From: Macrostomum lignano
Lineage: Eukaryota
Assembly (NCBI GenBank): GCA_002269645.1
Contig: NIVC01000381.1
Coordinates: 1 to 64,000, forward strand
Direction: 5' to 3'
Length of the DNA stretch: 64,000 bases
Positions 9,604 to 41,300 of this stretch are shown piece by piece (the stretch's first letter is position 1; the number at the start of each line of letters is the position of its first letter). The notes under the pieces were generated by a model. That model had not been told where the DNA came from and did no database searches. It worked only from the letters and a program-made list of their open reading frames with translations. Both the position numbers and the translations under genes were made by a program.

Positions 9604-10160
<557 letters not shown>

Positions 10161-11969: not shown

Positions 11970-12329
<360 letters not shown>

Positions 12330-16982: not shown

Positions 16983-17302
16983 AGCTAAAGGAATTTATTT
17001 GAAGTCTAGCTCTTTCTATATTGAACTGTTGCAGCAGGTGCTTTACTTAAGTTTATATAGGCTCGTATCTTTTCTTCAAAGTGAAATGAATCATCAGAAC
17101 TAGTGTTATCCAGTAACTGGTTCACTGAGTCCTAGATCGACTTGAAAAACACCTGCTTCTATTAGTTCTTATTGTTTATTACATTAACTTCAATAATTGT
17201 GCGCACATATTTCAGAGCGTTTCTAGCATCTAGATCTTGGCCCAGCAGTTGCCTATATAAAGATTTCAACAATTGACAGCATTGACTAAATAACTCGGGC
17301 CC

Positions 17303-21239
<3,937 letters not shown>

Positions 21240-23178
21240 CATTTAAGCAAGCAATTACTTTTATGTTTTAGTAATTTTTAAACAATAAATTTAACGAAAT
21301 CTTTTATAATTTAGTTTAGAACATTTTTTAAAATGCAAATAAATTTGTGATGATATTTCTGACGTTTAACTATTTTATTTTGGTTTTAGTAGCAGTTTTA
21401 ATTTGTGATTAACTTCAGCGTTTTTGCGCCTCTGCATGCAGAAATTTATGTAGTTCTTAATAGTTCTTTAAACCCAATAGCAATAAAATCTCAATTTAAC
21501 TTAACTTTAATTTTGTTTTAATTTTGCTTATATGTTTTTGTTCCTATTTGTTTTAATTGTCTTCCAATTGACTAAACTTTGACGATAAATATATATAAAA
21601 GATATCAATAATCGATAATCCTAGATTAGCATCAAATTACTAGATTCTAATATTTAAATGATAATTCATTTTCATACTAAAGCACACTTTTCCACGACAT
21701 AGTTCAAACATTTTTGTGCTATTTTGAATTTTTTAAACTTAGTTTCGTAATTTCAGCAAATGGTATCCATAGCAGTTTGTAAATGCTGCTTGTTTTGAAG
21801 TTAGAATTTTTCAAGTTTTGTTACTATTATAAAACTTTGACAGCGAATACATTTTGACAAATTTTAATTATAAAAAGTATCATTTTACTCTAAACCGGCT
21901 TTTCCACGTAATTTTTTTCTACATCTAGCGCTTGAATTAAATGTTGAATTATATTGTGCCAGGCTTATATGGTGCTTATAAAATTTATTGCACTTATTCC
22001 ATTCTGCTTATCTGTTTGTTTAGTTTTTTATAATAGTTTTTATAATTATATCGTGCTACTTTCTTGCTGTGCAAAATACATAAATTCACTGCTTCTTCGT
22101 GTTTACAACCAATCAATTTTAATTTCAAAGTTTTTGAAAAAAAGACCTTAACAAGACATTTCTTCTTGTACCTTTATTTATAAAATAGTTAGACCTTTGT
22201 GGAGGCTGAATTCATACATTCAAAAGTCCTAAAGCACTACCAGACAAGTAGTTTCATCAGTAACAAACTAACGCATTTTATGAATACAATAGAATTAATT
22301 ATAAAGCAATTAAAACTGGATAAAATGTTTAATAATATAATAAAATGTTTAAGCATGAAAACTGTGGCGAAAATCGATTTAATTTGAATCGGATATGCAT
22401 CAGTCGAAAGTGATTAAATGCCGTATTTGCTGTCGTCACATCCACTTATCTTTTTCGTTTATGAAAATAAAAAATGAGGCGATTTAATTTCGAGTTCTGC
22501 AATAAACTAGAAATTGAGATACATAAAATTTAATATTTTGATCAAATTGTGGAGCAATAGAATTCAGAAAAAATGTTGATTTGTTATAATACGCAAAACA
22601 AAAAACAGAAAGTTAATTGTTACCAACTTTAGTAACATTGTGGGACTGATATTTCTAATAGACATAAATTCGACTACAGCCAGAGAACTACAGGTAGGTC
22701 ACAAAAAATTAAAATAAATAATTACAGCTATTTAAAGGTTTCAAATTTATGTGAAAGTGTAGTTGAAATTCTGCGAGTCAGCGCGGCAATTCCAAATTGA
22801 AACTTTATAAATAGCAAAGGATGCACTAAATTTAAACTAGTTAATTAAAACAAACTATACAGAAAATACTCTAATTTCTTTATCAAGGAAGAAATTCACT
22901 TTTTTCATTAATACTCTAACTAGGAAATTTCCATTTTATATACATGGAATTTTACCTAAAATGGTAATGATTTTGCTAGCCTAATATCGACGAATTGCTG
23001 TATTTTAATGAACCCTAGACATGGGATTTCAATTACAACCATGATTTGTCTTATATATGAGAGTGATCCTACATACGGGATCAATCTTTAGATACAGGAT
23101 TTCCCTTCAATACGAGATTCTCCTATCATATTTGATTAGGTTTTTCTTTAAATTAGGTCGGATGCATGTCCTTTACGT

Positions 23179-26100
23179 TCAGATCTCGGCGTAGGTCCCA
23201 TAGCCGCCTAGGCGCATTCTTCGCATCCGATAAACGTCGAACGGTACGAGTCGTTTAGCGAACGCGACAACGGCAATCAGGCTGAGTAGGACGAGGCCTG
23301 AGCTGGTTAGAAAAGAGGCTTGCGGTCCGTAGCCGGAGAATAGAAGGCTCACCACTATGGGGCCGATGCAGCGAGCCAAGCTGCCCCCGCCTGTGAGGAG
23401 GCCCATCCACACGCCCTGTGTGTTTAAATGAGGTCATATATCTCTGTCTATGACTCATAAGTGTACAGATTGTTTAAATGAGGTCATATATCTCTGTCTA
23501 TGACTCATAAGTGTACAGATTGTTTAAATGAGGTCATATATCTCTGTCTATGACTCATGAGTGTACAGATTGCTCAAATGAGGTCATATCTCTGTCTATG
23601 ACTCATGAGTGTACAGATTGCTCAAATGAGGTCATATCTCTGTCTATGACTCATGAGTGTACAGATTGCTCAAATGAGGTCATATCTCTGTCTATGACTC
23701 ATGAGTGTACAGATTGTTTAAATGAGGTCATATCTCTGTCTATGACTCATCTATAAATTATCACTCACTTGTCGAATTTGGCCAAGAATTTTCGTGAGCA
23801 CGGAGGGCGCCAGCACTATGGCGATAGGATAGCCAACTGAGTGCACAGCGATGGCCAGAATTGCCAGGGGCAGTTTCACCGCAGGCACTCGGTAGCACCA
23901 GGGCAGAGCTGGCGAGCAGCCGCCTGAGTGGTCCTCGACTCGAATCGGCAGGCCGGCGCTGCCGTCGCTGGCGGTGCCGTTGACGATGAAGTAGGAGCTC
24001 AGCGGGGCCGGCAGTCCGACCCACGGGGTCAGCAGCATGAAGGCCGCGAAGGTCAGGGTCAGGGCGGCCACTATCAGATCGTTCTCCGTCAGGCTGGGTG
24101 GGGAAGGGGTGGCTGCTGATCTATCAGCTGATCTTTTGCTGATCCATCTGCTACTCTATCTGCTGATCTATCTACTGATCTATCTGCTGATCTATCTACT
24201 GATCTATCTGCTGATCTATCTACTGATCTATCTGCTGATCTATCTACTGATCTATCTGCTGATCTATCTGCTACTCTATCAGCTGATCTATCTACTGATC
24301 TATCTGCTGATCTATCTACTGATCTATCTGCTGATCTATCTACTGATCTATCTGCTGATCTATCTACTGATCTATCTACTGATCTATCTGCTGATCTATC
24401 TACTGATCTATCTGCTGATCTATCTGCTACTCTATCAGCTGATCTATCTGCTGCTCTATTTGCTGATCTATCTGCACATATCTATCTGCTGATCTATCTG
24501 CACATATCTATCTGCTGATATATCTGCTGATCCATCTGCTGAACTATCTGCTGATCTATCTGCACATATCTATCTGCTGATCTATCTGCTACTCTATCAG
24601 CCAATCTATCTACTGATCTATCAGCTGATCTATCTGCTGCTCTATTTGCTGATCTATCTGCCGATCTATCTGCCGATCTATCTGCTGATCTATCTGCACA
24701 TATCTATCTGCACATATCTATCTGCTGATCTATCTGCTGATCTATCTGCACATATCTATCTGCTGATCTATCTGCACATATCTATTTACTGATCTATCTG
24801 CACATATCTATCTGCTGATCTATCTACTGATCTATCTACTGATCTATCTGCTGATCTATCTACTGATCTATCTGCTGATCTATCTGCTACTCTATCAGCT
24901 GATCTATCTGCTGCTCTATTTGCTGATCTATCTGCACATATCTATCTGCTGATCTATCTGCACATATCTATCTGCTGATATATCTGCTGATCCATCTGCT
25001 GAACTATCTGCTGATCTATCTGCACATATCTATCTGCTGATCTATCTGCTACTCTATCAGCCAATCTATCTACTGATCTATCAGCTGATCTATCTGCTGC
25101 TCTATTTGCTGATCTATCTGCCGATCTATCTGCCGATCTATCTGCTGATCTATCTGCACATATCTATCTGCACATATCTATCTGCTGATCTATCTGCTGA
25201 TCTATCTGCACATATCTATCTGCTGATCTATCTGCACATATCTATCTGCTGATCTATCTGCACATATCTATCTGCTGATCTATCTGCTGATCTATCTGCA
25301 CATATCTATCTGCTGATCTATCTGCACATATCTATCTACTGATCTATCTGCTGATCCATCTGCTGAACTATCTGCTGATCTATCTGCACATATCTATCTG
25401 CTGATCTATCTGCACATATCTATCTGCTGATCTATCTGCACATATCTATCTGCTGATCTATCTGCACATATCTATCTGCTGATCTATCTGCTGATCTATC
25501 TGCACATATCTATCTGCTGATCTATCTGCACATATCTATCTACTGATCTATCTGCTGATCCATCTGCTGAACTATCTGCTGATCTATCTGCACATATCTA
25601 TCTGCTGATCTATCTGCACATATCTATCTGCTGATCTATCTGCACATATCTATCTGCTGATCTATCTGCACATATCTATCTACTGATCTATCTGCTGATC
25701 CATCTGCTGATCCATCTGCTGAACTATCTGCTGATCTATCTGCACATATCTATCTGCTGATCTATCTGCACATATCTATCTGCTGATCTATCTGCACATA
25801 TCTATCTGCTGATCTATCTGCACATATCTATCTGCTGATCTATCTGCACATATCTATCTGCTGATCTATCTGCACATATCTATCTACTGATCTATCTGCT
25901 GATCCATCTGCTGAACTATCTGCTGATCTATCTGCACATATCTATCTGCTGATCTATCTGCACATATCTATCTGCTGATCTATCTGCTGATCCATCTGCT
26001 GAACTATCTGCTGATCTATCTGCACATATCTATCTATCAATCAATTTATCTCGCCACTCACATTTTAGTCCAGCACCTAATAGATATAAAAGACACCATG

Positions 26101-28855
26101 GAGATGAAGCCGCAGACGGCCAGAGCGATGCCATTGTACAGCGATGCCTGCTCCTTATTCCAGGCGAACATGACCTGGCTCAGCGGGGTCATGATACTGC
26201 AATGCAGAAGTGAAAGCGGTGCAGCTACAGGCAGAATGCCAAAAATCTGAGATAAGACGTATTGCCAAAATGAAACTCCTACTATACTGACAGTCAAAGT
26301 TCATATCAATAATTAAAGTCCATAGGCTTAACTGGCTTATCTAAAAAAATGTTTTTTTAATCTAGTCTTGCCTTCGCCTTAATGCAATTTCAGTTAGCAA
26401 TATATGGTGTAAAAGCAATGATTGCAATGAATATTCTTGAGGTTTTGTTGAACTCAGAGCACAGAAAATTCACAGAATATTTTACGGGCAATTTTGCTCC
26501 TCTAAAAACCATAAACTCACGTTTCCAGCGTTGAAAAATTGAAAAACAGAACGCAGAACGTGAAGATGCAGATGAGGGCAGCCAAAGTGTCCGGCTTGGT
26601 CTGGCTGTCTGTCTGCTGATGCTGGAGTTGTTCAGCTGCATCCGAGTCTGCAATGAGATGGCGCTTCCAGTGATGAAGAAGTTTGAAGATCGCATCTAGG
26701 ACTAGGAGTCTGGGAGACTGAGGATCGGGGAGGCCCAGCAACTAAAGATCTGAGAGGGTGGTGACACAGCAACTGAGGATCTGGGATTGTGGCCCAGCAA
26801 CTGAGGATCTGGGAGGCTGGCCCAGCAACTGAGGATCTGGGAGGCTGGCCCAGCAACTGAGGATCTGGGAGGCTGGCCCAGCAACTGAGGATCTGGGAAG
26901 CTGGCCCAACAACTGAGGATCTGGGAGGCTGGCCAAGCAACTGAGGATCTGGGAGGCTGGCCCAGCAACTGAGGATCTGGGAAGCTGGCCCAGCAACTGA
27001 GGATCTGGGAAGCTGGCCCAACAACTGAGGATCTGGGAGGCTGGCCAAGCAACTGAGGATCTGGGAGGCTGGCCCAGCAACTGAGGATCTGGGAAGCTGG
27101 CCCAGCAACTGAGGATCTGGGAAGCTGGCCCAGCAACTGAGGATCTGGGAGGCTGGCCAAGCAACTGACACTCTGGGAGGCTGGCCCAGCAACTGAGGAT
27201 CTGGGCGGCTGGGCCAGCAACTGACACTCTGGGAGGCTGGCCCAGCAACTGGGGATCTTTTTGCTGTGGTAAAAAATGAAGTCGATAATATCAACGACAG
27301 CAAACAACCGCAAAGCACTGATAAAAACTCACTGATGCTAGCCGGATTAGCCAAAGATCTGTCCATCGTGTCAGTCTCGAAAAAGAACTCTTTGAAGAAG
27401 ACAGCAATCAAAACGATGTTTCCGATAGCTGTAATTGAAAGTGAAAATGAAAGAATATACAATTTTAATTAGTGAGAGGGGCACAGGGGAGAGTTAGAAG
27501 CGGTTCAGAGGATGAGCTCACCCATGAGAAAGGACAGCAGCCCGGCAGAGGTGTACATGTTGATCTGTAGCGCAGCGCCATGCACAGGGCCAGGATAGCT
27601 CAGTAGCGTGAATACAGCCTGCACCGCAGGGCCAACAATAAACCCCAGCGACTGGCAGATGGACACTTTGGCCATCACTTCAGTGCGCTCGGCCACCGTG
27701 GTGGCGCCAGACACGAAACTTCTAATCACGGCGCCATTTCCAGCGCCGAGACCAATGACAAAGCGGGACACTAATAGTACAAATCTGCGATTGGTTGGGA
27801 ATATGTGTACATAAGCGTATAGAGCGCTGCCAAATAGGCTGATCACTAGGGAGATTAGAATAGGGATTCTGGCCTGCTTCATCACGTTGAATAGCAAGCC
27901 AAGGATTGGGCTGGCAATCAGTTGGCCCAAGCTGAAGGCAGCAACCACCCAGCCTAGGAAGGCTTCATTTGATTCAGTGTCCACCTGTTTGAAAGTGAAA
28001 ATTCATGCATTATTATGATTTGCTGAGTTAATTTAATAATTTGAACCAGTGCCTATCTAAAACAAACCTAATTTAACTAAATATAAAATCTTTGAACTTT
28101 GGTTGATTAATAAAAAATAATAGTACACACAAAGATAATTTAGAATAAAAGGTTAGAATTTATTATTGTATATTAAAACACTGCCTCTGTAACTGATTTT
28201 GGAGCATCTTATTAGAAATAAAGTCAAACTCTAGCATTTTTGTCTTATATAAATATCATTGATTTTAAATTAAAATTAAAACTTATTTTTTATTAAGTTA
28301 TAATAAATATTTTGTAATTGTCAGTCTTTTCTAACATGAAATAATAAAATATAAACTTTATAATATTTTGATCCAAATAAAATAACACAAAAATTTAAAG
28401 ATTCTTTAACTTACCTGTTGCAGATATGGCCAAATTGAAGACAAACAAATTGAAAAACCCAAGCTAGATATAAAGAATGTCAAGTAACAAAGTCTAATCG
28501 ACTTCCACCTGTAGATTTCATCAGCTGGACTCCTGTTGATTGACACTGATCTAAAAAAAACAATTGTTAAGTTAAAAGCTTTACAGAACAAGTTTGTTCT
28601 TTATTTACAGACATGTAGGTCATTTTAGCATACTCTCCAAGATAATACTCAAAAAGACTAAAAAAATACATGGATAGCATAGGGTTTTATAGTTTTTTAT
28701 TCTTATACTACTACTTTTTTAATCAAAAAAGGAAACATTAACCTGTACGAAACTTACGAATTGCTTTCATTCTGGAGTGCAGCTGAAGTAGCATCAGAAT
28801 ACACACCAGCCAGCAATGGCGAATCTTCCTCGTCTTCATTAATTCGAATTGACAT
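23179..28855 (-). CDS. MFSD8: MFS transporter, MFSD8/CLN7-like; 8 exons: 28855-28758, 28550-28415, 27984-27522, 27428-27333, 26695-26521, 26196-26062, 24093-23769, 23415-23179 (~554 aa)
   Basis: Seven GT-AG introns with consistent phases give one open frame. MFSD8-like motifs: [57 protein letters not shown]...[49 protein letters not shown]. An acidic-dileucine-like EEDSPLL lies near the N-terminus. Confidence 0.9.
23420..23752. repeat. 46-48-bp minisatellite filling MFSD8 intron 7
   Basis: About 7 units of AAATGAGGTCATAT(AT)CTCTGTCTATGACTCAT(G/A)AGTGTACAGATTG. Confidence 0.95.
24112..26037. repeat. GCTGATCTATCT / GCACATATCTATCT compound minisatellite filling MFSD8 intron 6
   Basis: Directly visible; includes a ~460-bp internal duplication. 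Confidence 0.95.
26705..27256 (-). repeat. 28-bp satellite, array 2 (MFSD8 intron 4)
   Basis: Reverse complement of the array 1 unit. Confidence 0.95.
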
Positions 28856-29327
28856 ATTTATCTAGCTGCCTTGTACTGTGTTCACGCTGAAATAAAATTA
28901 TGTGCTTTAGTCGGTTTTATTCCTCACCAGTTCCTACACTACAGTCATGAGTCGCACTCACAGGCAAACAAGTGATTATGATTTATCAGAATATGAAGTC
29001 GTCTTTATTTTATAAAAAATGTACATTGTCTATTGACCTGGCAAGTTAAATTATGTTGTCGTGCACGAAATCCTTTGAGTTTATTGCCCATATCCTATAT
29101 TTTTGTGTACTAAAAAATTTAAGTTTATTAAATTAACATTTTTACCGCTATTCCTTAAATAAGAAAGCTTAAATTGTAGTGAATTTGTTTTACCGTTTTT
29201 GTTTCGGTACGTCGCAGGTTTTTAACTTTTTCAATATTTTTGAGAGAGTTTCAAATTTTTATACATGGAGCTCTAATTTCAAAAGTGGCTACTGTAAGCA
29301 ATCTGATCAGCAACTTTTTTGAAGCTA

Positions 29328-29388
29328 TTAAACCAGTGAGACGAAGTCAAGGCAGTTGGCACGAGAGGCGCAGGTTCGAGCCTGGCCC
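29328..29388 (-). repeat. Split direct repeat B2 (3' end of the retrotransposon)
   Basis: Exact 61-bp copy of 29651-29711. Confidence 0.93.
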
Positions 29389-29471
29389 TATTGTACGAGT
29401 ATTCGAGCGTATTTATTAACTTTAATTTACCGGACTTAAAAGCCAAATAAAAACCTTGGAGACTTAAAAGC

Positions 29472-29711
29472 GAGAAAAAAAATCAATACGCGCTTGGCAG
29501 GTCAGCGACAGCCCGCACCGTATTAAATAAACGCCACCCAGGCCGCGGGCACGTGACCAAGGCCCGGCCCACCACCCCCCCCCCGCACCAACGCACAAGA
29601 GCCACGCCCCACTGGTTTAACACCCAACCAAGCTACGCCCGGTCGGACCATTAAACCAGTGAGACGAAGTCAAGGCAGTTGGCACGAGAGGCGCAGGTTC
29701 GAGCCTGGCCC
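29472..29711 (-). repeat. Adjacent B1 (29711-29651) and A2 (29650-29472) repeats
   Basis: The junction GGTTTAA-T-GGTCC joins the element's 3'-end sequence to its 5'-end sequence. Confidence 0.93.
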
Positions 29712-29753
29712 AACCCAAACCAGAAAGTTCGACATAGAGAGAGAGAGAGAGAG

Positions 29754-30751
29754 TTAGAGCGCGCCAACCCGACGAGCCAAGCCATGCACAGCCGCCCTGG
29801 CATCCGAGTCCCGAGCAGATAGATAGCGAAACACTGAGTTGCCCTTCCAGTCGCCCAGCTTCTTGATCATCGGCAGTGGAACACCGAGCTGCATGGCTGC
29901 CGTAGCGCCGCCCCGCCGCAGCCCGTGGCCAGTGAACTCGCGTGGCGACAAACCCGCCGATGTGCAGAGCGAACGAAGCCGGCTATCAAACCTGCTAGCC
30001 GTCAGAGGCAACCATCCCGCGGACGACCACGTGGAGAACAGGTGAACCGGACGCGGCGCCTGGCCGATTCGGTTTGTCCGTAGCTGCCGCTCGAGCGCAC
30101 GGAACGTGCACAGGACACCCAAGCTTCCATCAGGCAGTTTCGGAAGAAACACTCGCTGAACTCGATCGCCAAACTGGTTGGTCTTCGAATGCCGCACAGT
30201 GAGCTCACAGTCGTACTCTGAGAAGACGATGCTTGATGCCGCCAGGTCGCACCACAGATCGAGCTGCCCCGATTGCGTCGTCACATTCGCTTTTCGCAGC
30301 ATACCCCACCAGGCTGCCAGAACTGCTGCCCAGAACGCGATGTCACTCTTCAGACGTTGGTCCAGGTGGGCGTGTAGCTTGAGGAGATCCGCGACTCTGA
30401 ATGGCTCCCTTGAGCGCTGCTGCCGACTGAGACACCGGCGAAGACCACGAACCAGCTTAACCATCGGCGACTCGCACGGGTCCGACCGGCCGAGAGCTCT
30501 GAAGTACAGCGAGACCGCGTTAGCATACGCCTGGCAACTCCGAAAGGCTGACAGCCGGGTGGACAGCTCGGCCAGGTATTCAGCCACGTGCACAGGCTCT
30601 GCCCGCAGCGGCGTCAGGTGCCGTGAATTGCAAAATCGCAGCCAAGACGCGAGCTGCGACCGGTAACTCCGCTTCGTGCGGGGCGCGTAGGCATTGCCCA
30701 GGATAAACGCGCAACGCTTGCTGAGGCGGTCGGGAGTCTGGCGCGGAGGGC
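29754..30751 (-). CDS. Retrotransposon ORF3: tyrosine recombinase (integrase), overlapping the RNase H 3' end; no in-frame ATG ahead of the N-terminal domain
   Basis: Catalytic residues R (GMLRKAN), K (HSKTNQ), HxxR (GHGLRRGG), W (LGDW) and Y (RYL). The frame stays open upstream of the track start at 30593, reading AYAPRTKRSYRSQLASWLRFC, the usual DIRS YR N-terminal helix. Confidence 0.9.
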
Positions 30752-32358
30752 CTGTAAAATGAGAAAAACGGAGGCAGCAGGGCAGAAAGCATGGCTAGCG
30801 ATCTCGTTAAAACAGCAGTCAACAGAGCTATACACCCGAAATAAAAAATCGCGCATTTTGTCCACGGCGTGCAGCCTAGAGCACGGGTCCGCAAAGACAT
30901 GGTACCAGCCAGGCACATGAAAAGCGCGCACCTCAACCCCACGCCTAACAGCAATGAGCATGGCAGTCTGGAACAGCGGCTGCAACTCAGGCTGCCGACA
31001 GCAACCTCTGTTAATCATGCCAACAGCCGCACTAGAGTCGGAGTAGACCACGACCGAACTGTCATTTAAAAAGGCACCCCAGCGAACCATACCAGCAGCG
31101 GAACAATAGCTTCTTTGTACGTGATATGCTTGTCTTTAAACTTTCCTCCAGCATCCAGATCCCAATTGACGTACAGCCAATCCACCATACCGCTACCATT
31201 GCGCAAAATGGCTCCGCCACCAGCACTGCTCGCATCGGTTTCGATGATCCAGCCGTTTGTGCAACTTCTCCAAAGCTGAAAATCAGGCAGCTTCAGAAGG
31301 GCACCTCGCCACCAGAGTAAAATACGCACAGTGTCAGCGGACACACGCACTTTGTGATGTGGCTTTTCCAGGGCATTAAGCAGGTCGAACAGGGGTCTTA
31401 GGAAGCAACTCCCAGCGTGCACCACCTGGACGACCCAGCTGAGCTTGCCACAAAGCGACGAAAGCTGTCGTTTCGAGAGACGCCTGCGCTGCGAAAAGTT
31501 AAGCAGTGTGGTGCGCATTTCCTCACACTTTTCCGCCGGCACACTAAGAACTCCACGGACAGTATCAATCTTCACACCGAGATACACCAAGCATTGCGTA
31601 GGTTCAACCACTTTGTTCCAATTGACACCAAAACCTAACTGGCGAACCAGCTTAATCAGCTCTTTCAGAGCATCCATACACTCTTTCTCGCTCTCGGCCG
31701 CAACCAGAAAATCATCCAGGTAAACCGAAATATTGGTCACGCCGCGTCGCACCATCATCCTCTTGACCGCCTGAGTAAGCCGGTAGAAAATCTCGACCGA
31801 GGCGCAGCTACCAAAGGGTAGCCGGGTGTCGACAAGCCATGTCAGATCACGGTTGCCTTTAAAGCGCCAACCAATGCCGGTCGCCTGGTAATCATCCGGA
31901 TGGATCGCCACGCTTCTGTAAGCTTGCGACAAATCAAGCTTTGTCATGAACCAGCCCTTGCCGATAGAGGCTGCAACCTTCTTGACGGACTCAAACCTGG
32001 GGCTCAGCTTCTTCGTATAGTTGTCATTTACCGAGTAGCCCGGAGGCGTGCTGCAGTCATGAATAAGTCGAACCTTCCCGTTATCCTTGGGAATTGCTCC
32101 CAGAGGGCTGACCATCGTAGGCTTCTTAGGCACAATCAAATACCTGCCATTCTCAATCTCTTCCTTAATTTGCAGCTCAACAGCGCGATGAAAAGCAGAA
32201 GTAGACATGTAATTGGCATTAAAAGTCTCACAAAGCCCTTTGCCATCAGTAATGCGAAAACCATTTGCGATGCCGTCTAGGATAAAATTCCGATCAGGGT
32301 CATTCTCAAGCTCAGAATCCCACGAACAAAAACGCAGGCGACCCCCCTGCACTGCCAA
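30614..32358 (-). pseudogene. Retrotransposon ORF2: reverse transcriptase plus RNase H, with a frameshift at ~31095
   Basis: RT motifs KVRLIHDCS, KLDLSQAYR, LPFG and YLDDFL. RNase H motifs ETDASS and KEA, continuing in the next frame (ORF 30614..31090) as VYSDS...HVPGWYHVFADPCSR. Confidence 0.9.
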
Positions 32359-32433
32359 CGACAGGATTGTTAAAATTTAAAGCAGGCTGAGCATTAGGCA
32401 AAATTTTAGGATTAAAACAGAGCATCGCAGACT

Positions 32434-33552
32434 TCAGTTTTTTGTCGAATGGTTGGCCTCAGGGTGGGCCTCGAAACAGATGCGGCATACGTGCCGGAAT
32501 TTGCAGCTCGACCGGAAGCACCCCCGGCGATTAAAGTGCAAGCAGAACTCTTCCCCGTCTGGCGTTCTGAGGCTCTTGGGGTCTATTGGTTTTTGAAAAC
32601 GCTGCTGTCGTGGCTGGGGCAATGACTTGCTGACTCCATGGTTTGCTGGAGTTCCAGTTCTGATTAAGTGCTTAGCAACGAGTTGGAAAGACTCCTTGCC
32701 CCATCGCTTGCCAGTTTCAGCTTGCCTAGTGCGGTAGTCCTCGTCAAAACGATTCACCTGCGCAAGGCCGAAGCCCGCGTCAAACAGCTCGCCAATCTGT
32801 ATTGAGTAGCGTAAGTAATTCATCAAATCAGTCGTGTCGGCAGTTCCATTTCTACTAGTCACCAGGGCACCATCCTTGATCATCTGCATCATCAGCCTGC
32901 AATTGCCTACCAAATACTGCGCTGCCGTGATGCTATCTGGATTAGGTTTTCTGCTCTTGTAAGTGATTCGGCCACCAGAACCATTAGCCAGCACCTCTTC
33001 CTGCTCAAAGCCGTCGAGGAAATCACGAATCAGGAGAGCCTTACGTCTACCAGAACACTCCATCCGTTCATTGGCCCTGTTCTGTGACAACAATCTGTCA
33101 AGCAGCTCATTGCCATTATCTGCTTGGTCTAATCCAGCATCATCACACCCATCAGGAAAGTAACTGGGGCCAGCAGGCTTGGCACACTCACCGCGATTCA
33201 TAGGACGCGTGGATGGACACTTGCGCTGCAGATCTCCGATCTCCCTCTTGAGTTGAGCGGCTTCCTTGCGTAGTTGCAACAGTCTGATCTCCTTCTCCGC
33301 TTTCGCGATGTCCTAGTCCAGGCCCGCCGCCGACTCCCGAGCCGCCTCCGTACTGATGTTGTCGTCTGCTTCGGCTTCTTGCTTAGATTGCTCCATGTTC
33401 TGCAACAGCGAATCTGTCCACGACTGGTCTGGGGCTGCGAGCAGGGCGCTGACAAGGTCGGCCTTGTTGCCCCGACTGCTTATGTTAGCGTGGGCACACA
33501 AGGCTTGCAGAGCCACCTTGCTCAGGTGCATAAGTTTGTCGCGGTCAGCCAT
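32434..33552 (-). pseudogene. Retrotransposon ORF1 (gag-like): N-terminal SAP-like helix-extension-helix, coiled coil, C-terminal Cys/His zinc fingers; interrupted by one in-frame TAG at 33315-33313
   Basis: Track ORFs 33313..33552 and 32434..33279 are in the same frame, separated only by GAC TAG GAC. The N-terminus LMHLSKVALQALCAHANISSRGNKADLVSALL fits the SAP pattern. The C-terminus FCLHFNRRGCFRSSCKFRHVCRICFEAHPEANH is typical of DIRS-order gag. Confidence 0.8.
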
Positions 33553-33563
33553 TGCAAAAAAAT

Positions 33564-33736
33564 GAGAAAAAAATCAATACGCGCTTGGCGGGTCAGCGAC
33601 AGCCCGCACCGTATTAAATAAACGCCACCCAGGCCGCGGGCACGTGACCAAGGCCCGGCCCACCACCCCCGCACCAACGCACAAGAGCCACGCCCCACTG
33701 GTTTAACACCCAACCAAGCTACGCCCGGTCGGACCA
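33564..33736 (-). repeat. Split direct repeat A1 (5' end of the retrotransposon)
   Basis: Near-identical to 29472-29650; differences are mainly homopolymer lengths and one substitution. Confidence 0.93.
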
Positions 33737-35370
33737 ATATTACTAAGGTAGTACGAGCGTAGCCTCGCTAACCACCAACTGGCCAAAGCACCGGGTGGGT
33801 ACTGCATGGTTTGTACTTAAGACTTGACGTGCATTTCTTGTAATACAAAGTAACTTGTACTTCTACGTGCCCCATCACAGGACAGTGTAAATGTTTGATT
33901 TTTCGAAGAAAAAATAATATCCTGCTTTAGTTCTATTATCCCATATACTAAAAATGAGTTGTCTGTATCTATCTATCTAGCTATGCGATAGATTTCAGAA
34001 AAAACGGCTCAACCGATTTTCTTCAAACTTGCACCATTTGATCAGAAATTTTCCTGGGACGGTACATGCATCTTGGCTAAGAAATTGCTCAATATTAAAG
34101 GGATTAAATATTCGAAAAACATGCTTTTTTGCAAAGGTCAAGCAGCTCTTTCGACCTGGAATGCATTGTATGAGTTGTAAGAATGCTAGAGAAAAAACCT
34201 ATACTGGCTGAATTCCGATTGTGATAAAGATTGCATCACAACTGAATTGTAACTCCGACTTGAATTGCGTCACAGTGTTGAAAACACTCTGTGGAAACAT
34301 AGCACGAGACCTGATTTAGACTGCGTAACCATATTGTTAACTTTAATTAGAACTGATACTGAACGATTGAAAAATTGATTATGTCATAACTCTCATAACT
34401 GCTTCGTGTTCATCTCTGCTTCGTGCTCATCTCGATCGCGTTAAACATACGAGTAAAAGAAGCGTCATGTAAAACGCTTAGTGGGGGAATTGCTGAGATG
34501 TCGAGGCTTACTCCAGAACCAAGAACCAAATGTTTCATTTCAAGCATAAGTAGCTCATGTAAAGCATAGAATATAAACGAATATTCGATAACACACATGC
34601 CTTTCTGCAAGGGTCAACAGAACTTTCTACTGCGAGCCATTCTGACTGGAATTAAACTAGGCAGCGCCAGTAAATTAGTATTTTTTGTCGCCACTCTAGA
34701 GAATTATAAATGTACACTGCGAGAAGAGATGTATATTATAAAATGTTCACGTGCACAATTAACAAACTAACTTTAAAAGCTGGAAAGAGGGAGAGTGAGA
34801 GAGTGAAACACATACGAGCGTACGAGTATATTTAATCGATTCACATCGCAAGCTAAAGCTAAAGAAACCTGAGTTGCATTTTCATATGCGATATTCAAGA
34901 CCCCCAATCTATAGGCTAAAGTACGTTTTAGTAAGACCGTCGTATCATAAAAAGTGCATACCATCCATCGATAAATAGAATTATTATTAAATGCCACAGA
35001 GATGTACATTGGCTACTGAGATTTGCGCCTCCTTCAGAAAATTTATCTCAATCCTTTAACATGGGAGAGTTAGCCTTAGGCTTAAAAATTCATTACAGTA
35101 CTGGGCCAAGGTGTTTTAGAGGGAGTATTGAATAATAAAAAAGTCCTGACCAATTAGCAGGCGGGTGTTGGAGACAGAATTTAGGCTTGCTGTACACACT
35201 GACAGTCTGACGACAGTGTACAAATGGTGTCCAGCTTTTTGGGGTTGTGTGGTTGATGAGTTTAAAACGCGTGACATGATAGATTTCATACCATACTCTT
35301 CTCGCACACAACCCCCATACTATTTTTTCATTATCACTCAAAATTCTTATTTTTCAATTCGAATTCCAAT

Positions 35371-38300
35371 ATGGCTCGACGTGGCACCAGCGCATTGAAG
35401 AAGAGCAGAGATGCCAAGAAGAAGCGTCAGCAAGAGAGTGCCGTTCAGCGAGAAGAGCGCCTGATGAGACTCCAACAGCAGGAGGCTGAGCGAAGAGCAA
35501 GTGAAACCGATGCTCAGCGAGAAGAGCGCCTGACGAGACTCCGACAGCAGGAGGCTGAGCGAAGAGCAAGTGAAACCGATGCTCAGCGAGAAGAGCGCCT
35601 GACGAGACTCCGACAGCAGGAGGCTGAGCGAAGAGCAAGTGAAACCGATGCTCAGCGAGAAGAGCGCCTGACGAGACTCCGACAGCAGGAGGCTGAGCGA
35701 AGAGCAAGTGAAACCGATGCTCAGCGAGAAGAGCGCCTGACGAGACTCCGACAGGAGAATGCTGAGCAAAGAGCAACTGAAACAGACGCTCAGCGTGAAG
35801 AGCGTAGATCTGCAGACAGAATTCGTGCAGAGAAGCGACGCGCTTCAGAAACCGAAGATGAACGAAGAGCTCGAATCGAAGCCGAACAAATTCGCCGTCG
35901 AGGAGTGTCGGTTAGCAGGTAGGATGACGTCTTAATCTGAGCTATTATATATTTCTGTGATCATTCTTAACATTCTGTGACCGTTAAATGATAATAATCA
36001 ATGTGCCCGTTGTGTTCATGTTTAGTCTTTTATGGGTATTTTGTATTGTAGTTGTTGTTTAATTGGTACATAGGCTTATACTGAAAAACTAGAGCCCATT
36101 TCTAAGTCTTTTAACGCAATTTTTCTCATATTTTTTAGATAGGCTTCCAGGAATTATACATACGAGATAAGTATTTTAGATAGAATCTACAATTAAAATA
36201 AATTCGGTTTCTAATAATATTAAGTTTTGAAGCCTGTTTCTAAGAATATTATATGTGTGAGTCGGCTTCGAAGAATCTTAAATCTATGAGATAGGTATTT
36301 AATATAACAATATTAATTTATGAGAATCGGTTAAGCATTTTTTACTGATGAAAATGGTTTTCGAAGAATCTTTGTTTATAATGCAATTACATTTTAGACT
36401 GGTTTGTAAGAATGTAGAATGGCATAAAAATATTCTTCACTATTCTAAGAACCGCCAAATAAAGTTGTGTATAATCCAAATATACTAAATCTTTATTTCC
36501 TCTATTCCAGGTTTGATAGTAGTGAGTTGGCCACACCGTCTGTGGTACCTTTTGATGCGTTGCGCATAATTCGAATTCCTGGTGATGGGAACTGTTTTTT
36601 TCATGCAATCTGTGACCAGTTGCAGGGCACTCCACTTGAGACCGATGCAGCATCTTTAAGACACGAGCTGACGAGCCGTGTAGTGCAGATTATGCCAGAA
36701 TTGATTGAACAAGGCTTTGTTTTGCCAGAAAATGCTGATTTCATTGTTGATTCATCTTTTTCTGAAGGCACATATGTGCCTGATGAAGTTGTTCCGCTTT
36801 TAAGCCGTTGTTTTAATGTTGATCTGGTAATTTATCAAGAAAATGGCAGTGTATTGCAGTACTGTATGTCCCCTTTGCAGCCACCGATTGCAATCGTCCG
36901 AATTCTTTTGCGTCATGAGCATTATGAGTCATTGCGATTTGCTAATCCGATTCCAGTTTCTGAGCCCATTGTAGATGAAGAGGAGCCAAGACTAACTCAG
37001 CAGAGTGCAGGTCATTTTGGCGCAAGACCTGCTCAAGAGAGGTAGGTCATTGGTATGACTGGTCATCATAATTTATTTGTCATCGAACTCAAGTTGTTTT
37101 ATTCTAATATTTTTTTTGTAAAATGAAAGATTAACCGGGAAAACTATTTGCTATTAATCCTTCCTAATCCTAATCCTTCCAATCACAGGCCAGAACGGAT
37201 TATCAGGCCTGAAGCGCCAGCCCATAACTGTGGCCCAATGGACAGAGCATGCGACCAATGCGGTGCATTACTTTGGTGCTCTGAGACGAGGAATTTCTGC
37301 TGCGCCAAAGGCAAGGTAAAGCTACCCAGCCGCACCGTGCCTCAAGTGCTGGCGGATCTGTACCTGGGGCGGCACAGACTGAGTGCCGAGTTCCTGACCA
37401 ACATTAGAAGTTACAACTCGGCGCTGCACCTGACATCGCTGGGTGCCAAACTGCGGTTGGTGCCAGGCTGGTGTCCCAGCTTCATCATCAGCGGCCAGTT
37501 GCATCACAACACGGCGTCGCTGTTTGCAGAAGATTCAGCTGAGCCCCATGGCTGGCAAGTGTATTTCAATGATCGCGAACTTGAAAGCCGCCAGAGTCTC
37601 AGCCAGAAGGTGAAGCCGGAGCTACTGGAGCTGCTGCAGACGCTGCTTCACGAGTGCAACGGCTATGTCCGCAGCCTGAGGGCAGTCGCTCATCGAATCA
37701 GCCAAGATCCGGAGTTGGGAGATGCGCGAATCGTGATTCACCCTGACCGTCGACCATCTGGGGAACACATTCGGTATGTCTGCAAGACACTTTAATAACA
37801 TATTTTGCGTAATAAAGTATCCAATTATCCAATTTGTACAGACTTTGTATCCCACAAAATCCGTTTGAAATCAGGCGCTACAACTTGCCTACGGCGAACG
37901 AGGTCGGTATCCTGATCGTTGAGGACAATGAGAACACACCGGCCAGTCGGGACGTCGTGATTCAGCTGCGTGGAGGCGGTTCCCAGCGAATCAGTGAGAC
38001 GCACCGCTCATACGACCCGCTGGAGTATGTGCTGCTGTTCCCGAATGGCGAAGATGGCTGGCACCCGGAGTTGCTGATGAGTAATGGCAAGAAATTGACG
38101 CCCATGAAGTATTATGCGAGCGAAATCATGGTGCGAGCGGGCCAGTTCAGTGTGCTGCACTATGGCCGAAGATTATTTCAGCAGTACTTGGTGGACATGT
38201 GTGCCAAGATTGAGGCAGAGAGGCTGCTGTATTTGCGGACCCATCAGCAGGACCTGCGCAGCGAGACGTATAGCGGTCTGCGGGACGCTTTGTTTGCGGC

Positions 38301-41300
38301 TGATGGCAGGTCTACCGACAGAGATCCGAGTGACATAGGCAAGCCCGCGCATGTGCTTCTGTCTTCGAGCTTCGTTGGCGGGCCAAGGTACCTGATGGAG
38401 AGGCTACAGGACGCTATGACCTATGTTCACAAGTTCGGTAAGCCGGACCTGTTTGTCACCGCAACGTGCAATCCGAAATGGCCGGAGATCAGCGCCCAGC
38501 TGCTGCCTGGACAGCGGGCAGAAGACCGGCCCGACATTGTTAGCCGAGTCTTTGAAATGAAGAAGAAAGCTCTGCTGGCCCAGTTGACCAAGCGCTATGG
38601 GAAAGAGACCGCTCACGTTTGCTCACTGGAGTACCAGAAGCGTGGTGAGTATAAATTCTGACTTGCAAGAATCAAACTTTTAATATTTATTAAATTTAAA
38701 TTTACAAAGATTTGTGATTTTTTTCTACTTTTTTGACGCTCCAGGTCTTCCCCATGTGCACTTTTTGCTGTGGCTCGTGAGCGGTCAGCGAGTGACTCCG
38801 GACCGATACGATAACATCGTGTCTGCCGAGATTCCGGACCCAGAGCAGCAGCCCGTGCTGTATGAGCTGGTGAAGACGCACATGATCCATGGCCCCTGCG
38901 GCAAGGACAATCCAGCATGCCCTTGCATGGAGAATGGCGAATGCAGCAAGGGCTTTCCTAAAGAATTCCAGCAGGTGACGCTGACCAGCGATACTGGCTA
39001 CCCACTGTACCGCAGACTATCGCCTGAGATGGGCGGATTTACAGTGGACAAGCTGTTTAAAGGCCGGAGCATTCGCATGGACAACAGGGGAGTTCAAACG
39101 CTAATATATTGCTTAGTTGTGCATTGCTGCTTTTGTTTCTGAAAGTTAATGATATTATTTTTTCATTGAAACAGGTGGGTCGTTCCGTACAGCCCTGACC
39201 TGTTGCTCCAGTTTGCGTGCCACTTGAACGTCGAAGTTTGCGCCACTGTGAAGTCGGTCAAGTACGTGATCAAGTACCTGTTAAAGGGTGGCGACATGGC
39301 GACGTTCAAAGTCGATGCCAATAGGAATTCTACTGAACCGAGAGAGCAGGCAGTGGGTAACCAGCAGCCAACGCAAACGACACGAAATGAGCCGCGGCGT
39401 GATGAGATTAAGGAGTACCTGTCCGCGCGCTACATTGGTCCAATGGAAGCCGTGAATACCATCTTGGGCTTTGAAGTAATTCGCATTCTAATTATTATTG
39501 GCTTATTTTAACCAGAGCTGTGAAACCTCGTCATAGTATAAATTGAATTTCCATCGAAACTTAAAGGCTGTATATTTTCCTTTCACTTTCTGATCAGGTG
39601 CACAACAGGTTTCCGGCGGTCATCCGACTCTGCGTTCACAAGTCGGAAGAGCAGCTCGTGTATTTCAACGAGGGGACCGCAAGAGCAAAAGCGAGAACGC
39701 CGAAGGATTCGACGTTGACGGCATTTTTCAAGCTGTGCCGTATTGACGAATTTGCTGGGTCCTTGCTCTACACGGAGGTGCCGTCCTACTTCGTGTGGCA
39801 CTCCAGCGAAAGAGAGTGGCGGCGGGCCAAGCAGGGTGTGCGAGTCGATGGCCATCCGGGTGTAGTGCGGAACAAAAACGTTGCACGCATGTACACGGTG
39901 AGTCCAAGAGCAGGTGATTTATTTTATGTTCGAATGCTCCTTTTGAATGTTAGGGGACCGACTAGCTTCGAGGCGCTGCAGACCGTGGACGGCGTTGTGC
40001 ATCCGAGCGCCAAGGCTGCTTGCATGGCCCTTGGCCTGCTGCAGCGAGATGATCACTGGCGGCGGTGTCTAGCTGAGGCCGTTCAGTCAAGAATGCCAAG
40101 AGCCCTGAGACATCTTCTGGCCGTAATTCTCATATGGGGTGAGCCTGAGGATGGCAGCGACCTCTGGTGCAGTTTTGCCGAGGATCTCAGCGAGGACCTG
40201 CGGTTTCACCACCGAGACTTGAGCACCGAGGAGATTACTGACCTGGCGCTGCGTGAGCTTCAGAGCATGCTGATCTCCATGGGCGGGAGAAGCCTGCCAG
40301 AGTACGGCCTGCCTGCGGCCTCTGTGACACCTCAAGATGGACCAATGCAGTTTGATACGGTTGAGCAAGCACTGATTACTGAGGCGCGCTTACCAATGCT
40401 GACAGATGAGCAGAAAGCGGTGTACGAGTCCGTGACTCAGAATCTTGTGGACGGCACCAGCGGCTTGCACTTCCTGGACGCGCCCGCTGGCACTGGCAAG
40501 ACCTTCCTGCTGGAGGTTCTGCTAGCCTTCGTGCGCAGCCGGCGTGAAGTCGCCCTCGCCGTTGCGGCTTCTGGAATCGCAGCGACTCTTTTGCCAGGTG
40601 GACAGACGGCGCATTCAACGTGAGTAATTTATTGTCAATATTTCAAAAAGCAGTTGTAAATATTTCGTGTGCTGTAAATATGTTCAGCATGGTGAAACTA
40701 TTTGTCTATGCCAGGTTCAAGATACCAATTCGGGCGATCCGTTCGAGCAAAGACGTGTGCGCTGTTGGAGCGCAGTCCAAACAGGCCGCTGTATTTCGGA
40801 CAGTGCGTCTAATTGTCTGGGACGAGATTTCTATGACAAACCGGAAGGATTTGGAGGCCGTCGACCGGTGCTTGCGAGACGTGCGGAAGCAGGACGTGCC
40901 ATTCGGCGGAGTGGTTTTCGTTTGCGCTGGGGACTTTCGCCAGCTGCTGCCCGTTGTGGTGCATGGGACTCGAGCCAACAGCGTCATGGCGTGTGTCAGC
41001 AGATCCCCACTGTGGAAATTTTTCCGGCGGCATCGCCTTACAAGAAACATCCGATTGCTGAGCAGTTCCGATTCTGCAACGTATTTGAGATACACCGAGC
41101 TACTCAAGCAGGTAAGTTTGTTTTCATCAGTTTATTTATTGGAAGATTTAAGGATGTTCGGTTTCTTTCGTGTTGAGAGCTCCATTTAAAAAATTGTGGC
41201 TTATTCAAGAATGCCTTGCTTAAAGTCTGTCTAGCGTTTTAAATATTTGACTTTTAACTCCCCCAGATCGGATCCGGAACAATTGAGCAGGATGCAGAGG

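What the first reader, a model, noticed from the sequence alone, without database searches (positions are those of the whole stretch)
29754..33552. One splice donor, two acceptors: predicted alternative splicing that fuses a SAP-like module to both RT/RNaseH and the tyrosine recombinase of a YR retrotransposon
Seen in sequence: ORF2 and ORF3 lack an in-frame ATG ahead of their conserved N-terminal motifs; ORF2's first ATG lies ~50 codons in, after W...DPDRNFILDGIANGF. Inside gag, after the SAP-like domain and coiled coil, is a consensus donor CGCG|GTGAGT (intron starts at 33191), which cuts codon 121 in phase 1. In front of ORF2 lies TTTAAC-AATCCTGTCGTTGGCAG| (AG at 32353-32352); joining gives G+TG, then CAG GGG, in the RT frame (840-nt intron). 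In front of ORF3 lies GTTTTTCTCATTTTACAG| (AG at 30753-30752); joining gives G+GC, then CCT CCG, in the YR frame (2440-nt intron, ~452-aa product). Inference: unspliced RNA encodes Gag and serves as genome, while two spliced RNAs encode SAP-RT/RH and SAP-YR. Both would drop the Gag zinc fingers but share a DNA-binding leader that could tether or target the enzymes. How downstream ORFs of DIRS-order elements are expressed is, to my knowledge, poorly resolved, and I know of no description of this shared-exon scheme. Caveat: AG is common and each phase match has a 1-in-3 chance.
Basis: partly seen in the sequence, partly recalled or inferred. Interest (0 to 1): 0.9.

Follow-up and report, generated by a model that had tools for sequence, protein, structure and literature searches.

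The report
Spliced Gag-leader–recombinase fusion in Ngaro retrotransposon
A flatworm jumping gene makes its recombinase from a spliced RNA that borrows the start of the coat-protein gene, and the same splice signals recur in related elements of other animal phyla; the proposed second splice, to the reverse transcriptase, is an artefact of a one-base insertion in this copy.

Summary
The window is Macrostomum lignano contig NIVC01000381.1. The feature is a defective 4.4-kb Ngaro-type tyrosine-recombinase (YR) retrotransposon on the minus strand.

The donor-to-YR splice (33192^30751, a 2440-nt intron) is real at the annotation level. The transcript-based GenBank CDS BOX15_Mlig028869g1 at this locus starts MNRGPPRQ and spans exactly that intron. 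An intact copy gives the full 453-aa SAP/coiled-coil–YR protein (PAA89852.1).

The same layout recurs elsewhere: a phase-1 donor in gag and a phase-1 acceptor about 40 codons before the YR "FC" motif. It appears in RefSeq models from amphioxus, a hemichordate and a limpet. It also appears in unselected metagenome elements (acceptor phase 1 in 48 of 52, donor in 43 of 56, both in 26 of 35).

The donor-to-RT half fails. The window copy has a private extra G (6 G against 5 in three other copies). With 5 G, ORF2 has its own ATG 8 nt after the gag stop, and the proposed junction is out of frame. That acceptor scores like background (rank 22 of 211, against rank 1 for the YR acceptor).

Verdict: partly supported. 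I found no published description of this splice.

The parts
29327..33736 (-). Whole Ngaro-type YR retrotransposon copy (about 4410 nt), defective
   Evidence: Its limits are where 98-99% identity to copies in L002, L003 and L004 begins and ends.
33558..33736 (-). Split direct repeat A1 (5' end; holds the 5' UTR and probably the promoter)
   Evidence: Self-BLAST gives 95% identity to A2.
32434..33552 (-). gag (ORF1, 372 codons): SAP, coiled coil, gag core and a CCCH zinc finger. Broken here by TAG at 33315-33313.
   Evidence: The intact version is P0122 = BOX15_Mlig026183g2.
33192..33552 (-). Exon 1, the shared leader (120 codons + 1 nt), used by both Gag and the YR fusion
   Evidence: P0127 begins with these 120 residues.
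33439..33534 (-). SAP-like motif (residues 7-38)
   Evidence: Pfam PF02037: 22.5 bits in this copy, 23.9 bits (equal to the cut-off) in the intact P0127.
33208..33330 (-). Predicted long helix / coiled coil (residues about 75-115)
   Evidence: AF2 single-sequence model places a helix at residues 43-111, with pLDDT up to 83 for residues 80-100. The overall model is of low confidence.
33186..33194 (-). 5' splice site GCG|GTGAGT; the intron starts at 33191; phase 1
   Evidence: It is the best-scoring GT in gag, is identical in 5 of 5 copies, and is used by the annotated CDSs.
30752..33191 (-). 2440-nt alternatively spliced intron, holding the gag core and the whole of RT/RNaseH
   Evidence: The gene range of BOX15_Mlig028869g1 is 3448 nt for a 1008-nt CDS. 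At the intact copy the intron is 2441 nt.
30752..30770 (-). 3' splice site CGTTTTTCTCATTTTACAG| (pyrimidine tract + AG)
   Evidence: Rank 1 of 211 AG sites. Identical in 5 of 5 copies.
29754..30751 (-). Exon 2: tyrosine recombinase (ORF3), with no ATG of its own before the core-binding domain
   Evidence: Pfam finds Phage_integrase and a SAM-like N-terminal domain. P0121 is 100% identical.
30614..32425 (-). ORF2 (RT/RNaseH). Its own ATG is at 32425-32423. This copy is frameshifted by the extra G in 32347-32342 and by a missing C at 31092/31091.
   Evidence: ORF2 is intact (535 aa) in L003. RVT_1 matches at E = 1.6e-17.
32352..32353 (-).
   Evidence: Rank 22 of 211 at 0.5 bits. The junction is out of frame in the 5-G copies.
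29650..29711 (-). Split direct repeat B1
   Evidence: 100% identical to B2.
29466..29650 (-). Split direct repeat A2
29327..29388 (-). Split direct repeat B2 (3' end)

Best explanation
This is a degenerate copy of an Ngaro-type (DIRS-order) retrotransposon of Macrostomum lignano, with the layout A1-gag-RT/RH-YR-B1A2B2. The family produces at least two RNAs from one promoter.

The unspliced RNA is the transposition template and the gag mRNA. It also carries ORF2 (RT/RNaseH), which has its own AUG 8 nt after the gag stop. How that AUG is reached is not shown; re-initiation or leaky scanning is my inference.

In a fraction of transcripts, the spliceosome removes a 2.44-kb intron that runs from a GTGAGT donor after gag codon 120 to a strong acceptor directly in front of ORF3. 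ORF3 has no AUG of its own, so it is translated as a 453-aa fusion. The fusion consists of the first 120 residues of Gag (a SAP-like DNA-binding motif plus a coiled coil) followed by the tyrosine recombinase.

Because Gag and the YR fusion share this N-terminal module, the recombinase could co-assemble with Gag on the RNA/cDNA complex or be tethered to DNA. That functional role is inference.

The same intron, with a phase-1 donor upstream of the gag core and a phase-1 acceptor about 40 codons before the conserved YR 'FC' motif, is a conserved trait of a broad clade of animal-associated Ngaro-like elements.
For: - P0121 (PAA84308.1, BOX15_Mlig028869g1) is 100% identical to the predicted junction product and starts MNRGPPRQ. 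Its gene range in L001 (window 33201..29754) is 3448 nt for a 1008-nt CDS, which leaves a 2440-nt intron.
- P0127 (PAA89852.1) is the full 453-aa leader–YR fusion at an intact copy, with a 2441-nt intron.
- That annotation was built only from RNA-seq and transcript assemblies: STAR, StringTie, BLAT-mapped Trinity, TACO and TransDecoder (PMC5730564).
- Donor and acceptor are identical in all copies, and the acceptor ranks 1 of 211.
- ORF3 has no in-frame ATG before its core-binding domain.
- RefSeq two-exon models have the same architecture and phase in Branchiostoma belcheri, Glandiceps talaboti and Patella vulgata.
- The acceptor position is conserved to within 2 residues relative to YR motifs.
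- In 80 RT-anchored metagenome loci, the best acceptor near the YR N-terminus is phase 1 in 48 of 52. The best donor in gag is phase 1 in 43 of 56. Both are phase 1 in 26 of 35, against about 4 expected. In-silico splicing gives continuous 400-580-aa ORFs.
- Controls inside coding sequence give 38% phase 1 for acceptors and 48% for donors, with much lower acceptor scores.
- 27 of 52 of these YR ORFs have no ATG of their own.
Against: - I saw no reads. Junction support is inferred from a transcript-based annotation that allowed up to 1000 multi-mappings.
- There is no protein-level evidence.
- RefSeq Gnomon models can be partly ab initio; the Gigantopelta model is a patchwork.
- About half of the related elements, such as L006, also have an in-frame ATG for the YR, so splicing may not be obligatory everywhere.
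- The SAP call sits exactly at the Pfam threshold.
- The structural model is of low confidence.
- The tethering or co-assembly role of the leader is untested.
Confidence: 0.75

Rival explanations
1. One reading: one donor feeds two acceptors and gives both SAP–RT/RH and SAP–YR fusion proteins.
For: In the window copy both junctions are in frame. An ML2 gene model (P0001, A0A1I8HAA6) joins the leader to RT.
Against: - Three of four copies have 5 G, not 6, after acceptor 1. In those copies the junction is out of frame with a stop after about 25 codons, and ORF2 has its own ATG; ORF2 is intact over 535 aa in L003.
- Acceptor 1 ranks 22 of 211.
- P0001 is an ab initio patchwork. It passes through a mini-exon read out of frame inside gag and enters RT at a different site.
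- No transcript-based (BOX15) leader–RT protein was found.
- Relatives have an ORF2 ATG next to the gag stop, or a single-stop readthrough layout.
Confidence: 0.04
2. The splice occurs but is a by-product, either cryptic or host-imposed. Functional YR would instead be made by frameshifting from the overlapping ORF2 tail, or by non-AUG or internal initiation.
For: ORF2 overlaps ORF3 by about 140 nt. About half of related elements have some in-frame ATG upstream of the YR domain. L006 has the start MAVSYY....
Against: - Position, phase and strength of both splice sites are conserved across phyla and across dozens of divergent elements. That is hard to explain without selection.
- Reading the overlap by eye, I saw no canonical X_XXY_YYZ slippery heptamer in the ORF2 frame. 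No tool was run for this.
- The first in-frame ATG of ORF3 (MVKLV...) lies after the core-binding domain.
Confidence: 0.12
3. The 2440-nt 'intron' is an annotation or assembly artefact. For example, reads from internally deleted genomic copies, or a chimeric Trinity contig, could have been mapped onto full-length copies.
For: The pipeline allowed up to 1000 multi-mappings and merged de novo contigs. I could not inspect the reads.
Against: - The gap has exact GT..AG borders with the best donor and best acceptor in the element.
- It is annotated independently at two loci.
- The same architecture appears in other phyla.
- No processed (intron-less) copy was found in the loci held.
Confidence: 0.04
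4. The acceptors receive the M. lignano spliced leader (SL trans-splicing), whose 3' AUG starts translation of ORF2 or ORF3.
For: About 30% of M. lignano genes are SL trans-spliced, and the 35-nt SL ends in ATG (PMC8629364).
Against: Joined to the YR acceptor, the SL AUG reads ATG GCC CTC CGC. That is the ORF2-tail frame, not the YR frame. Joined to acceptor 1, it is out of the RT frame with either 5 or 6 G. I worked both out by hand from the sequences. The annotated CDSs use the cis donor.
Confidence: 0.03

Closest known systems
Ngaro retrotransposons (DIRS order, YR retrotransposons)
   Same: Split direct repeats A1-[ORFs]-B1A2B2. ORF order is gag-like, RT/RNaseH, YR. There is no methyltransferase domain. 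The description of the family follows PMC8547959 and PMC9210276.
   Different: Published descriptions that I could search treat the three ORFs as separate or overlapping, and none mentions native splicing. Here the YR is expressed as a spliced Gag-N-terminus fusion. This family's leader carries a SAP motif, which the amphioxus, hemichordate and limpet leaders lack.
Retroviral subgenomic splicing, above all the foamy-virus spliced pol mRNA, and the Gag-Pol principle (my own knowledge)
   Same: A single transcript serves as genome and gag mRNA when unspliced, and as the mRNA for a downstream enzyme when spliced. A shared Gag N-terminus on the enzyme recalls Gag-Pol co-assembly.
   Different: Foamy-virus Pol is not a Gag fusion. 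Gag-Pol arises by frameshift or readthrough, not by splicing. Here the enzyme is a tyrosine recombinase rather than a DDE integrase, and RT is left out of the fusion.
Rice tungro bacilliform virus ORF IV mRNA (my own knowledge)
   Same: Splicing removes a multi-kb intron and fuses a short 5' ORF that has an AUG, in frame, to a downstream ORF that lacks a usable start.
   Different: RTBV is a plant pararetrovirus. Its leader ORF is tiny and is not part of the capsid protein.
Ogre, copia and BARE LTR retrotransposons (BARE: PMC3735527; the others from my own knowledge)
   Same: Retrotransposons that use partial splicing of the genomic transcript to set which proteins are produced.
   Different: In those elements, splicing restores gag-pol continuity or produces a gag-only mRNA. 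Here it skips the gag core and RT/RH and yields a leader–recombinase fusion.

Membership tests
Ngaro (DIRS order) | Split direct repeats arranged A1-[ORFs]-B1A2B2 | tested here: met
   A1 33736-33558, B1 29711-29650, A2 29650-29466, B2 29388-29327. The definition is taken from PMC8547959.
Ngaro (DIRS order) | Encodes RT/RNaseH and a tyrosine recombinase instead of a DDE integrase, in the order gag-RT/RH-YR | tested here: met
   RVT_1 at E = 1.6e-17. Phage_integrase plus a SAM-like N-terminal domain, both just below the Pfam cut-offs. The motifs HGLRRGG and GDW...Y are present.
Ngaro (DIRS order) | No methyltransferase domain after RNaseH (this separates Ngaro from DIRS1-like and PAT-like elements) | tested here: met
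   No methyltransferase hit in the ORF2 Pfam scan. The RNaseH end and the YR start overlap, which leaves no room for one.
Ngaro (DIRS order) | RT/YR phylogenetic placement within the Ngaro clade | not tested
   No tree with reference Ngaro, PAT and DIRS1 sequences was built. The closest RT relatives (40-47% identity) are unnamed.
SAP domain (PF02037) | Score at or above the Pfam gathering threshold (23.9 bits) | tested here: inconclusive
   22.5 bits in the window copy and 23.9 bits in the intact leader P0127. Related M. lignano leaders score 24.3 and 28.9 bits. The AF2 helix-loop-helix at residues 2-38 is of low confidence.
Retrovirus-like alternative splicing of a genomic transcript | A spliced RNA with the exact junction exists | tested here: met
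   The evidence is indirect. Transcript-derived CDSs PAA84308.1 and PAA89852.1 require the junction, and the annotation method is described in PMC5730564. Reads were not inspected.
Retrovirus-like alternative splicing of a genomic transcript | The unspliced RNA coexists with the spliced one and encodes Gag | tested here: met
   Full-length gag CDSs come from the same annotation at other copies: BOX15_Mlig026183g1/g2 and Mlig026840g5.
Retrovirus-like alternative splicing of a genomic transcript | The fusion protein is made and is needed for transposition | not testable with these tools
   This needs proteomics or ribosome profiling, and a donor-mutant transposition assay.

The most novel reading that the evidence does not exclude
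Splicing of a Gag-N-terminal leader onto the tyrosine recombinase is the ancestral and normal way in which this whole clade of metazoan Ngaro-like retrotransposons expresses its recombinase. The shared leader (a coiled coil plus a lineage-specific DNA- or zinc-binding module, SAP in Macrostomum) delivers the recombinase into the Gag/cDNA complex or onto chromatin. That would make it a splicing-based functional equivalent of Gag-Pol for a non-DDE integrase.
Probability: 0.45. Interest if true: 0.8.

Novelty: new variant of a known kind. Interest (0 to 1): 0.7.

Why it matters
How DIRS-order elements translate their downstream ORFs has not been worked out, and their recombinase ORFs often lack a start codon. 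A conserved intron that fuses the Gag N-terminus to the recombinase gives a concrete, testable answer for the Ngaro group.

It would explain why gene predictors keep producing 'xerD-like' proteins with odd N-terminal extensions in invertebrate genomes. It suggests how a tyrosine recombinase is recruited to the replication complex or to DNA.

It also gives annotators a rule: join gag exon 1 to the YR ORF in phase 1. And it shows that single degenerate copies can mislead, since here a 1-nt insertion created a convincing but false second junction.

Tried and rejected
- Whole-window repeat search was swamped by minisatellites. Self-BLAST replaced it and found no second copy of the element in the window.
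- P0001 (an ML2/WormBase ParaSite model) at first looked like proof of a leader–RT fusion. tblastn showed a patchwork with an out-of-frame mini-exon inside gag and an RH-to-YR 'intron' that uses a weak AG (rank 57). I rejected it as evidence.
- Other ML2 models (P0163, P0179, P0190, P0283-P0285) all use the same donor but join it to assorted sites. I treated them as predictor output. P0163 is not on record in the contig index.
- The Gigantopelta RefSeq model P0165 is a patchwork on a degenerate copy and is not a leader–YR model.
- SL trans-splicing as the source of the AUG was rejected on frame.
- The AF2 single-sequence model was too poor (pLDDT 41.8) for a fold search, so none was run.
- A search for an intron-less (processed) copy in the held loci found none.
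- Seven literature searches and reading of PMC6681497, PMC7192593, PMC8547959, PMC9210276 and PMC4157794 found no report of native splicing in DIRS or Ngaro elements. Goodwin & Poulter 2004 was not held. The Poulter & Goodwin 2005 and Poulter & Butler 2015 reviews, which I expect are not held, I did not try to read, so prior description cannot be excluded.
Full report
**Identity of the sequence.**
The RT-containing query found a 93%-identical Macrostomum lignano protein. The YR query found a 100%-identical GenBank protein. The locus that encodes this protein, L001, equals window 23754-39201 reversed and sits at the same coordinates in NIVC01000381.1 of assembly Mlig_3_7. The window is therefore positions 1-64000 of that contig.

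**What the element is.**
- It lies on the minus strand from about 33736 to 29327, judged by where identity to other copies starts and stops.
- It has split direct repeats: A1 33736-33558, B1 29711-29650, A2 29650-29466 and B2 29388-29327.
- Its ORFs are gag (33552-32434), RT/RNaseH and a tyrosine recombinase (30751-29754).
- There is no methyltransferase domain.
- This is the Ngaro architecture as described in PMC8547959 and PMC9210276.

**Check of the observation.**
- The donor is CGCG|GTGAGT, and exon 1 (33552-33192) is 361 nt, so it is phase 1.
- The first AG is at 32353-32352 and the second at 30753-30752.
- Both joins are in frame in this copy.

Three defects of this copy were missed:
- an in-frame TAG at 33315-33313, inside exon 1;
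- a missing C at 31092/31091, which frameshifts RNase H;
- a run of six G at 32347-32342, immediately after 'acceptor 1'.

**The RT half fails.**
I recovered four more copies of the family from Mlig_3_7: L002a, L002b, L003 and L004. I also recovered a truncated copy, L005.
- All three copies that cover the site have five G, not six.
- With five G, ORF2 begins at its own ATG (window 32425-32423), 8 nt after the gag TGA. It reads MLCFNPKILPNAQPALNFNNPVVGSAGGRLRFCSWDSELENDPDRNF... and is intact for 535 aa in L003.
- In those copies the donor-to-32351 join is out of frame and stops after about 25 codons.
- With a crude acceptor score the site ranks 22 of 211 AGs (0.5 bits).
- The one database protein that joins the leader to RT (P0001, an ML2 model) is an ab initio patchwork. 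It goes through a mini-exon read out of frame inside gag and enters RT elsewhere.
- Relatives show the same juxtaposition of gag stop and ORF2 start: +17 nt in L006, +12 nt in L008 and a 31-nt overlap in L010. L007 has gag and RT in one frame separated by a single TGA.

**The YR half holds.**
- P0121 (PAA84308.1, BOX15_Mlig028869g1) is 335 aa, starts MNRGPPRQTPDRL and is 100% identical to the predicted junction product.
- Its gene range (window 33201..29754) is 3448 nt for a 1008-nt CDS, so there is one 2440-nt intron with exactly the predicted borders.
- It starts at Met119 only because this copy has the TAG at codon 80.
- At an intact copy (L003, NIVC01000135.1), the annotation gives P0127 (PAA89852.1). 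This is 453 aa and equals the full leader (1-120) plus the YR, with a 2441-nt intron. L004 would encode the same protein.
- The Mlig_3_7 annotation contains no ab initio step. It comes from STAR-mapped RNA-seq, StringTie, BLAT-mapped de novo transcripts, TACO, TBONE and TransDecoder (PMC5730564).
- Unspliced gag CDSs are annotated at other copies.
- The donor is the best GT in gag. The acceptor is by far the best AG downstream of it, at 9.4 bits against 4.5 for the next. Both are identical in all copies.
- ORF3 opens only 15 codons before the acceptor, and its first in-frame ATG lies after the core-binding domain.
- The donor is also used in chimeric transcripts, such as BOX15_Mlig017555g1 at a truncated copy.

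**Trans-splicing does not explain it.**
The M. lignano spliced leader ends in ATG (PMC8629364). Joined to the YR acceptor, that ATG falls in the ORF2-tail frame, not the YR frame.

**The leader.**
- The SAP match scores 22.5 bits in the window copy and 23.9 bits, exactly the Pfam cut-off, in the intact leader.
- Two other M. lignano families have leaders with clearer SAP matches (24.3 and 28.9 bits). One of them, P0242, is again a SAP–coiled-coil–YR protein, although it is an ML2 model.
- A single-sequence AF2 model is poor overall. It shows helix 2-21, a loop, helix 30-38 and one long helix 43-111.

**Conservation beyond Macrostomum.**
An exhaustive HMMER search with P0127 showed that most YR relatives are stand-alone proteins of 310-335 aa. 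Some carry N-terminal extensions of 120-220 aa. Several of these are RefSeq models. I mapped three of them onto their loci:

| Species | Donor (phase) | Intron | Acceptor |
|---|---|---|---|
| Branchiostoma belcheri | AGAAAG\|GTAAGG (1) | 2833 nt | TTTTACAG\|GTCATC |
| Glandiceps talaboti | AAACAG\|GTAATG (1) | 3291 nt | CTATTGCAG\|GTCAAC |
| Patella vulgata | AGCAA\|GTATGT (1) | 2248 nt | TCTAAACAG\|ATCCAG |

- In each case exon 1 is the N-terminal part of an intact gag ORF.
- The intron holds the gag core and an intact RT/RH ORF.
- The YR frame opens 1-6 codons before the acceptor in Branchiostoma and Patella; in Glandiceps it is open for about 43 codons before it.
- Two elements picked only as RT hits (L006, L007) have equivalent phase-1 sites.
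- The acceptor falls within two residues of the same alignment column, about 40 codons before the invariant FC motif, in all six elements.

**Systematic test.**
I fetched 80 metagenome loci using only an RT alignment.
- The best acceptor-like AG within -60 to +30 nt of the YR N-terminus is phase 1 in 48 of 52 loci. It is often the top-ranked AG of the whole contig.
- The best donor in the gag ORF is phase 1 in 43 of 56 loci. It usually lies 195-225 codons before the gag stop.
- After clustering at 60% RT identity, the counts are 30 of 34 (p = 5e-11) and 26 of 33 (p = 1e-7).
- Both sites are phase 1 in 26 of 35 loci, against about 4 expected. In-silico splicing gives uninterrupted ORFs of 400-580 aa and introns of about 2.2 kb.
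- Control windows inside coding sequence give 38% phase 1 with a mean acceptor score of 1.5, against 6.1 in the real windows. For donors, the control gives 48% phase 1.
- 27 of 52 YR ORFs have no in-frame ATG ahead of the domain.

**Mechanism.**
- Shown, at the level of annotation and comparison: the junction, its product, the coexistence of unspliced gag mRNA, and the conservation of the sites.
- Inferred: splicing is partial so that the genomic RNA survives. ORF2 is translated from unspliced RNA by re-initiation or leaky scanning. The shared leader tethers the recombinase to DNA (through SAP) or co-assembles it with Gag (through the coiled coil).

**Comparison and novelty.**
The logic resembles the foamy-virus spliced pol mRNA, the RTBV sORF–ORF IV splice and the splicing seen in Ogre, copia and BARE. 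Those comparisons rest on my own knowledge, apart from BARE (PMC3735527). The enzyme, the skipped segment and the Gag-leader fusion differ from all of them. Seven literature searches and five papers on YR retrotransposons contained no mention of native splicing. Key subscription reviews were not available to read (for one of them). I rate this a new variant of a known kind.

**Verdict.**
The finding as written is half right.

Noticed in passing
window 35371-39201 and beyond, + strand: A large Helitron-like Rep/helicase gene (1753-aa product; Helitron_like_N, PIF1 and AAA_30 domains) lies just upstream of the element. It contains a 69-nt tandem repeat of 5 units at 35445-35804.
   Followed up: no
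window 28855 down to 23754 and beyond, - strand: An MFS_1 transporter gene starts about 470 nt downstream of the element's 3' end, in the same orientation.
   Followed up: no
window 15747-16980, 26732-27258, 47541-48832: The same 28-nt minisatellite occurs three times. The first array is inverted relative to the other two. The window as a whole is packed with minisatellites, for example 127 units of 23 nt at 50658-53576 and 153 units of 12 nt at 24113-26023.
   Followed up: no
window 32436-32423; L006 5981-6003; L008 5997-6014; L010 6017-6047; L007 5983-5988: The gag stop and the ORF2 start are tightly juxtaposed in several elements: 8, 17 and 12 nt apart, or overlapping. In L007, gag and RT share one frame separated by a single TGA. 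This hints at re-initiation or readthrough as the way RT/RH is translated.
   Followed up: partly
L005 (NIVC01001081.1) 8001-24022: A 3'-truncated copy of the element donates its leader exon and donor to a 16-kb transcript (BOX15_Mlig017555g1, ...PMNR|DQTNVV). An ML2 TMEM144 model likewise ends in the leader exon (P0123). The element's donor can therefore create chimeric host transcripts.
   Followed up: partly
L009 (Glandiceps talaboti OZ203274.1) 6119-6868: This hemichordate element has an extra 250-aa ORF of unknown function between gag and RT/RH, inside the intron.
   Followed up: no
window 29735-29752, - strand: A (CT)9 microsatellite follows directly after the YR stop codon, ahead of repeat B1.
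   Followed up: no
UniProt M. lignano A0A1I8* entries (P0001, P0163, P0179, P0190, P0283-P0285): The ML2/WormBase ParaSite gene models over this family are exon patchworks. They all start at Met53 of the leader and use the GTGAGT donor, then join it to assorted sites. UniProt domain names such as 'RabBD' and 'PKcGMP_CC' on them only reflect the coiled coil.
   Followed up: partly
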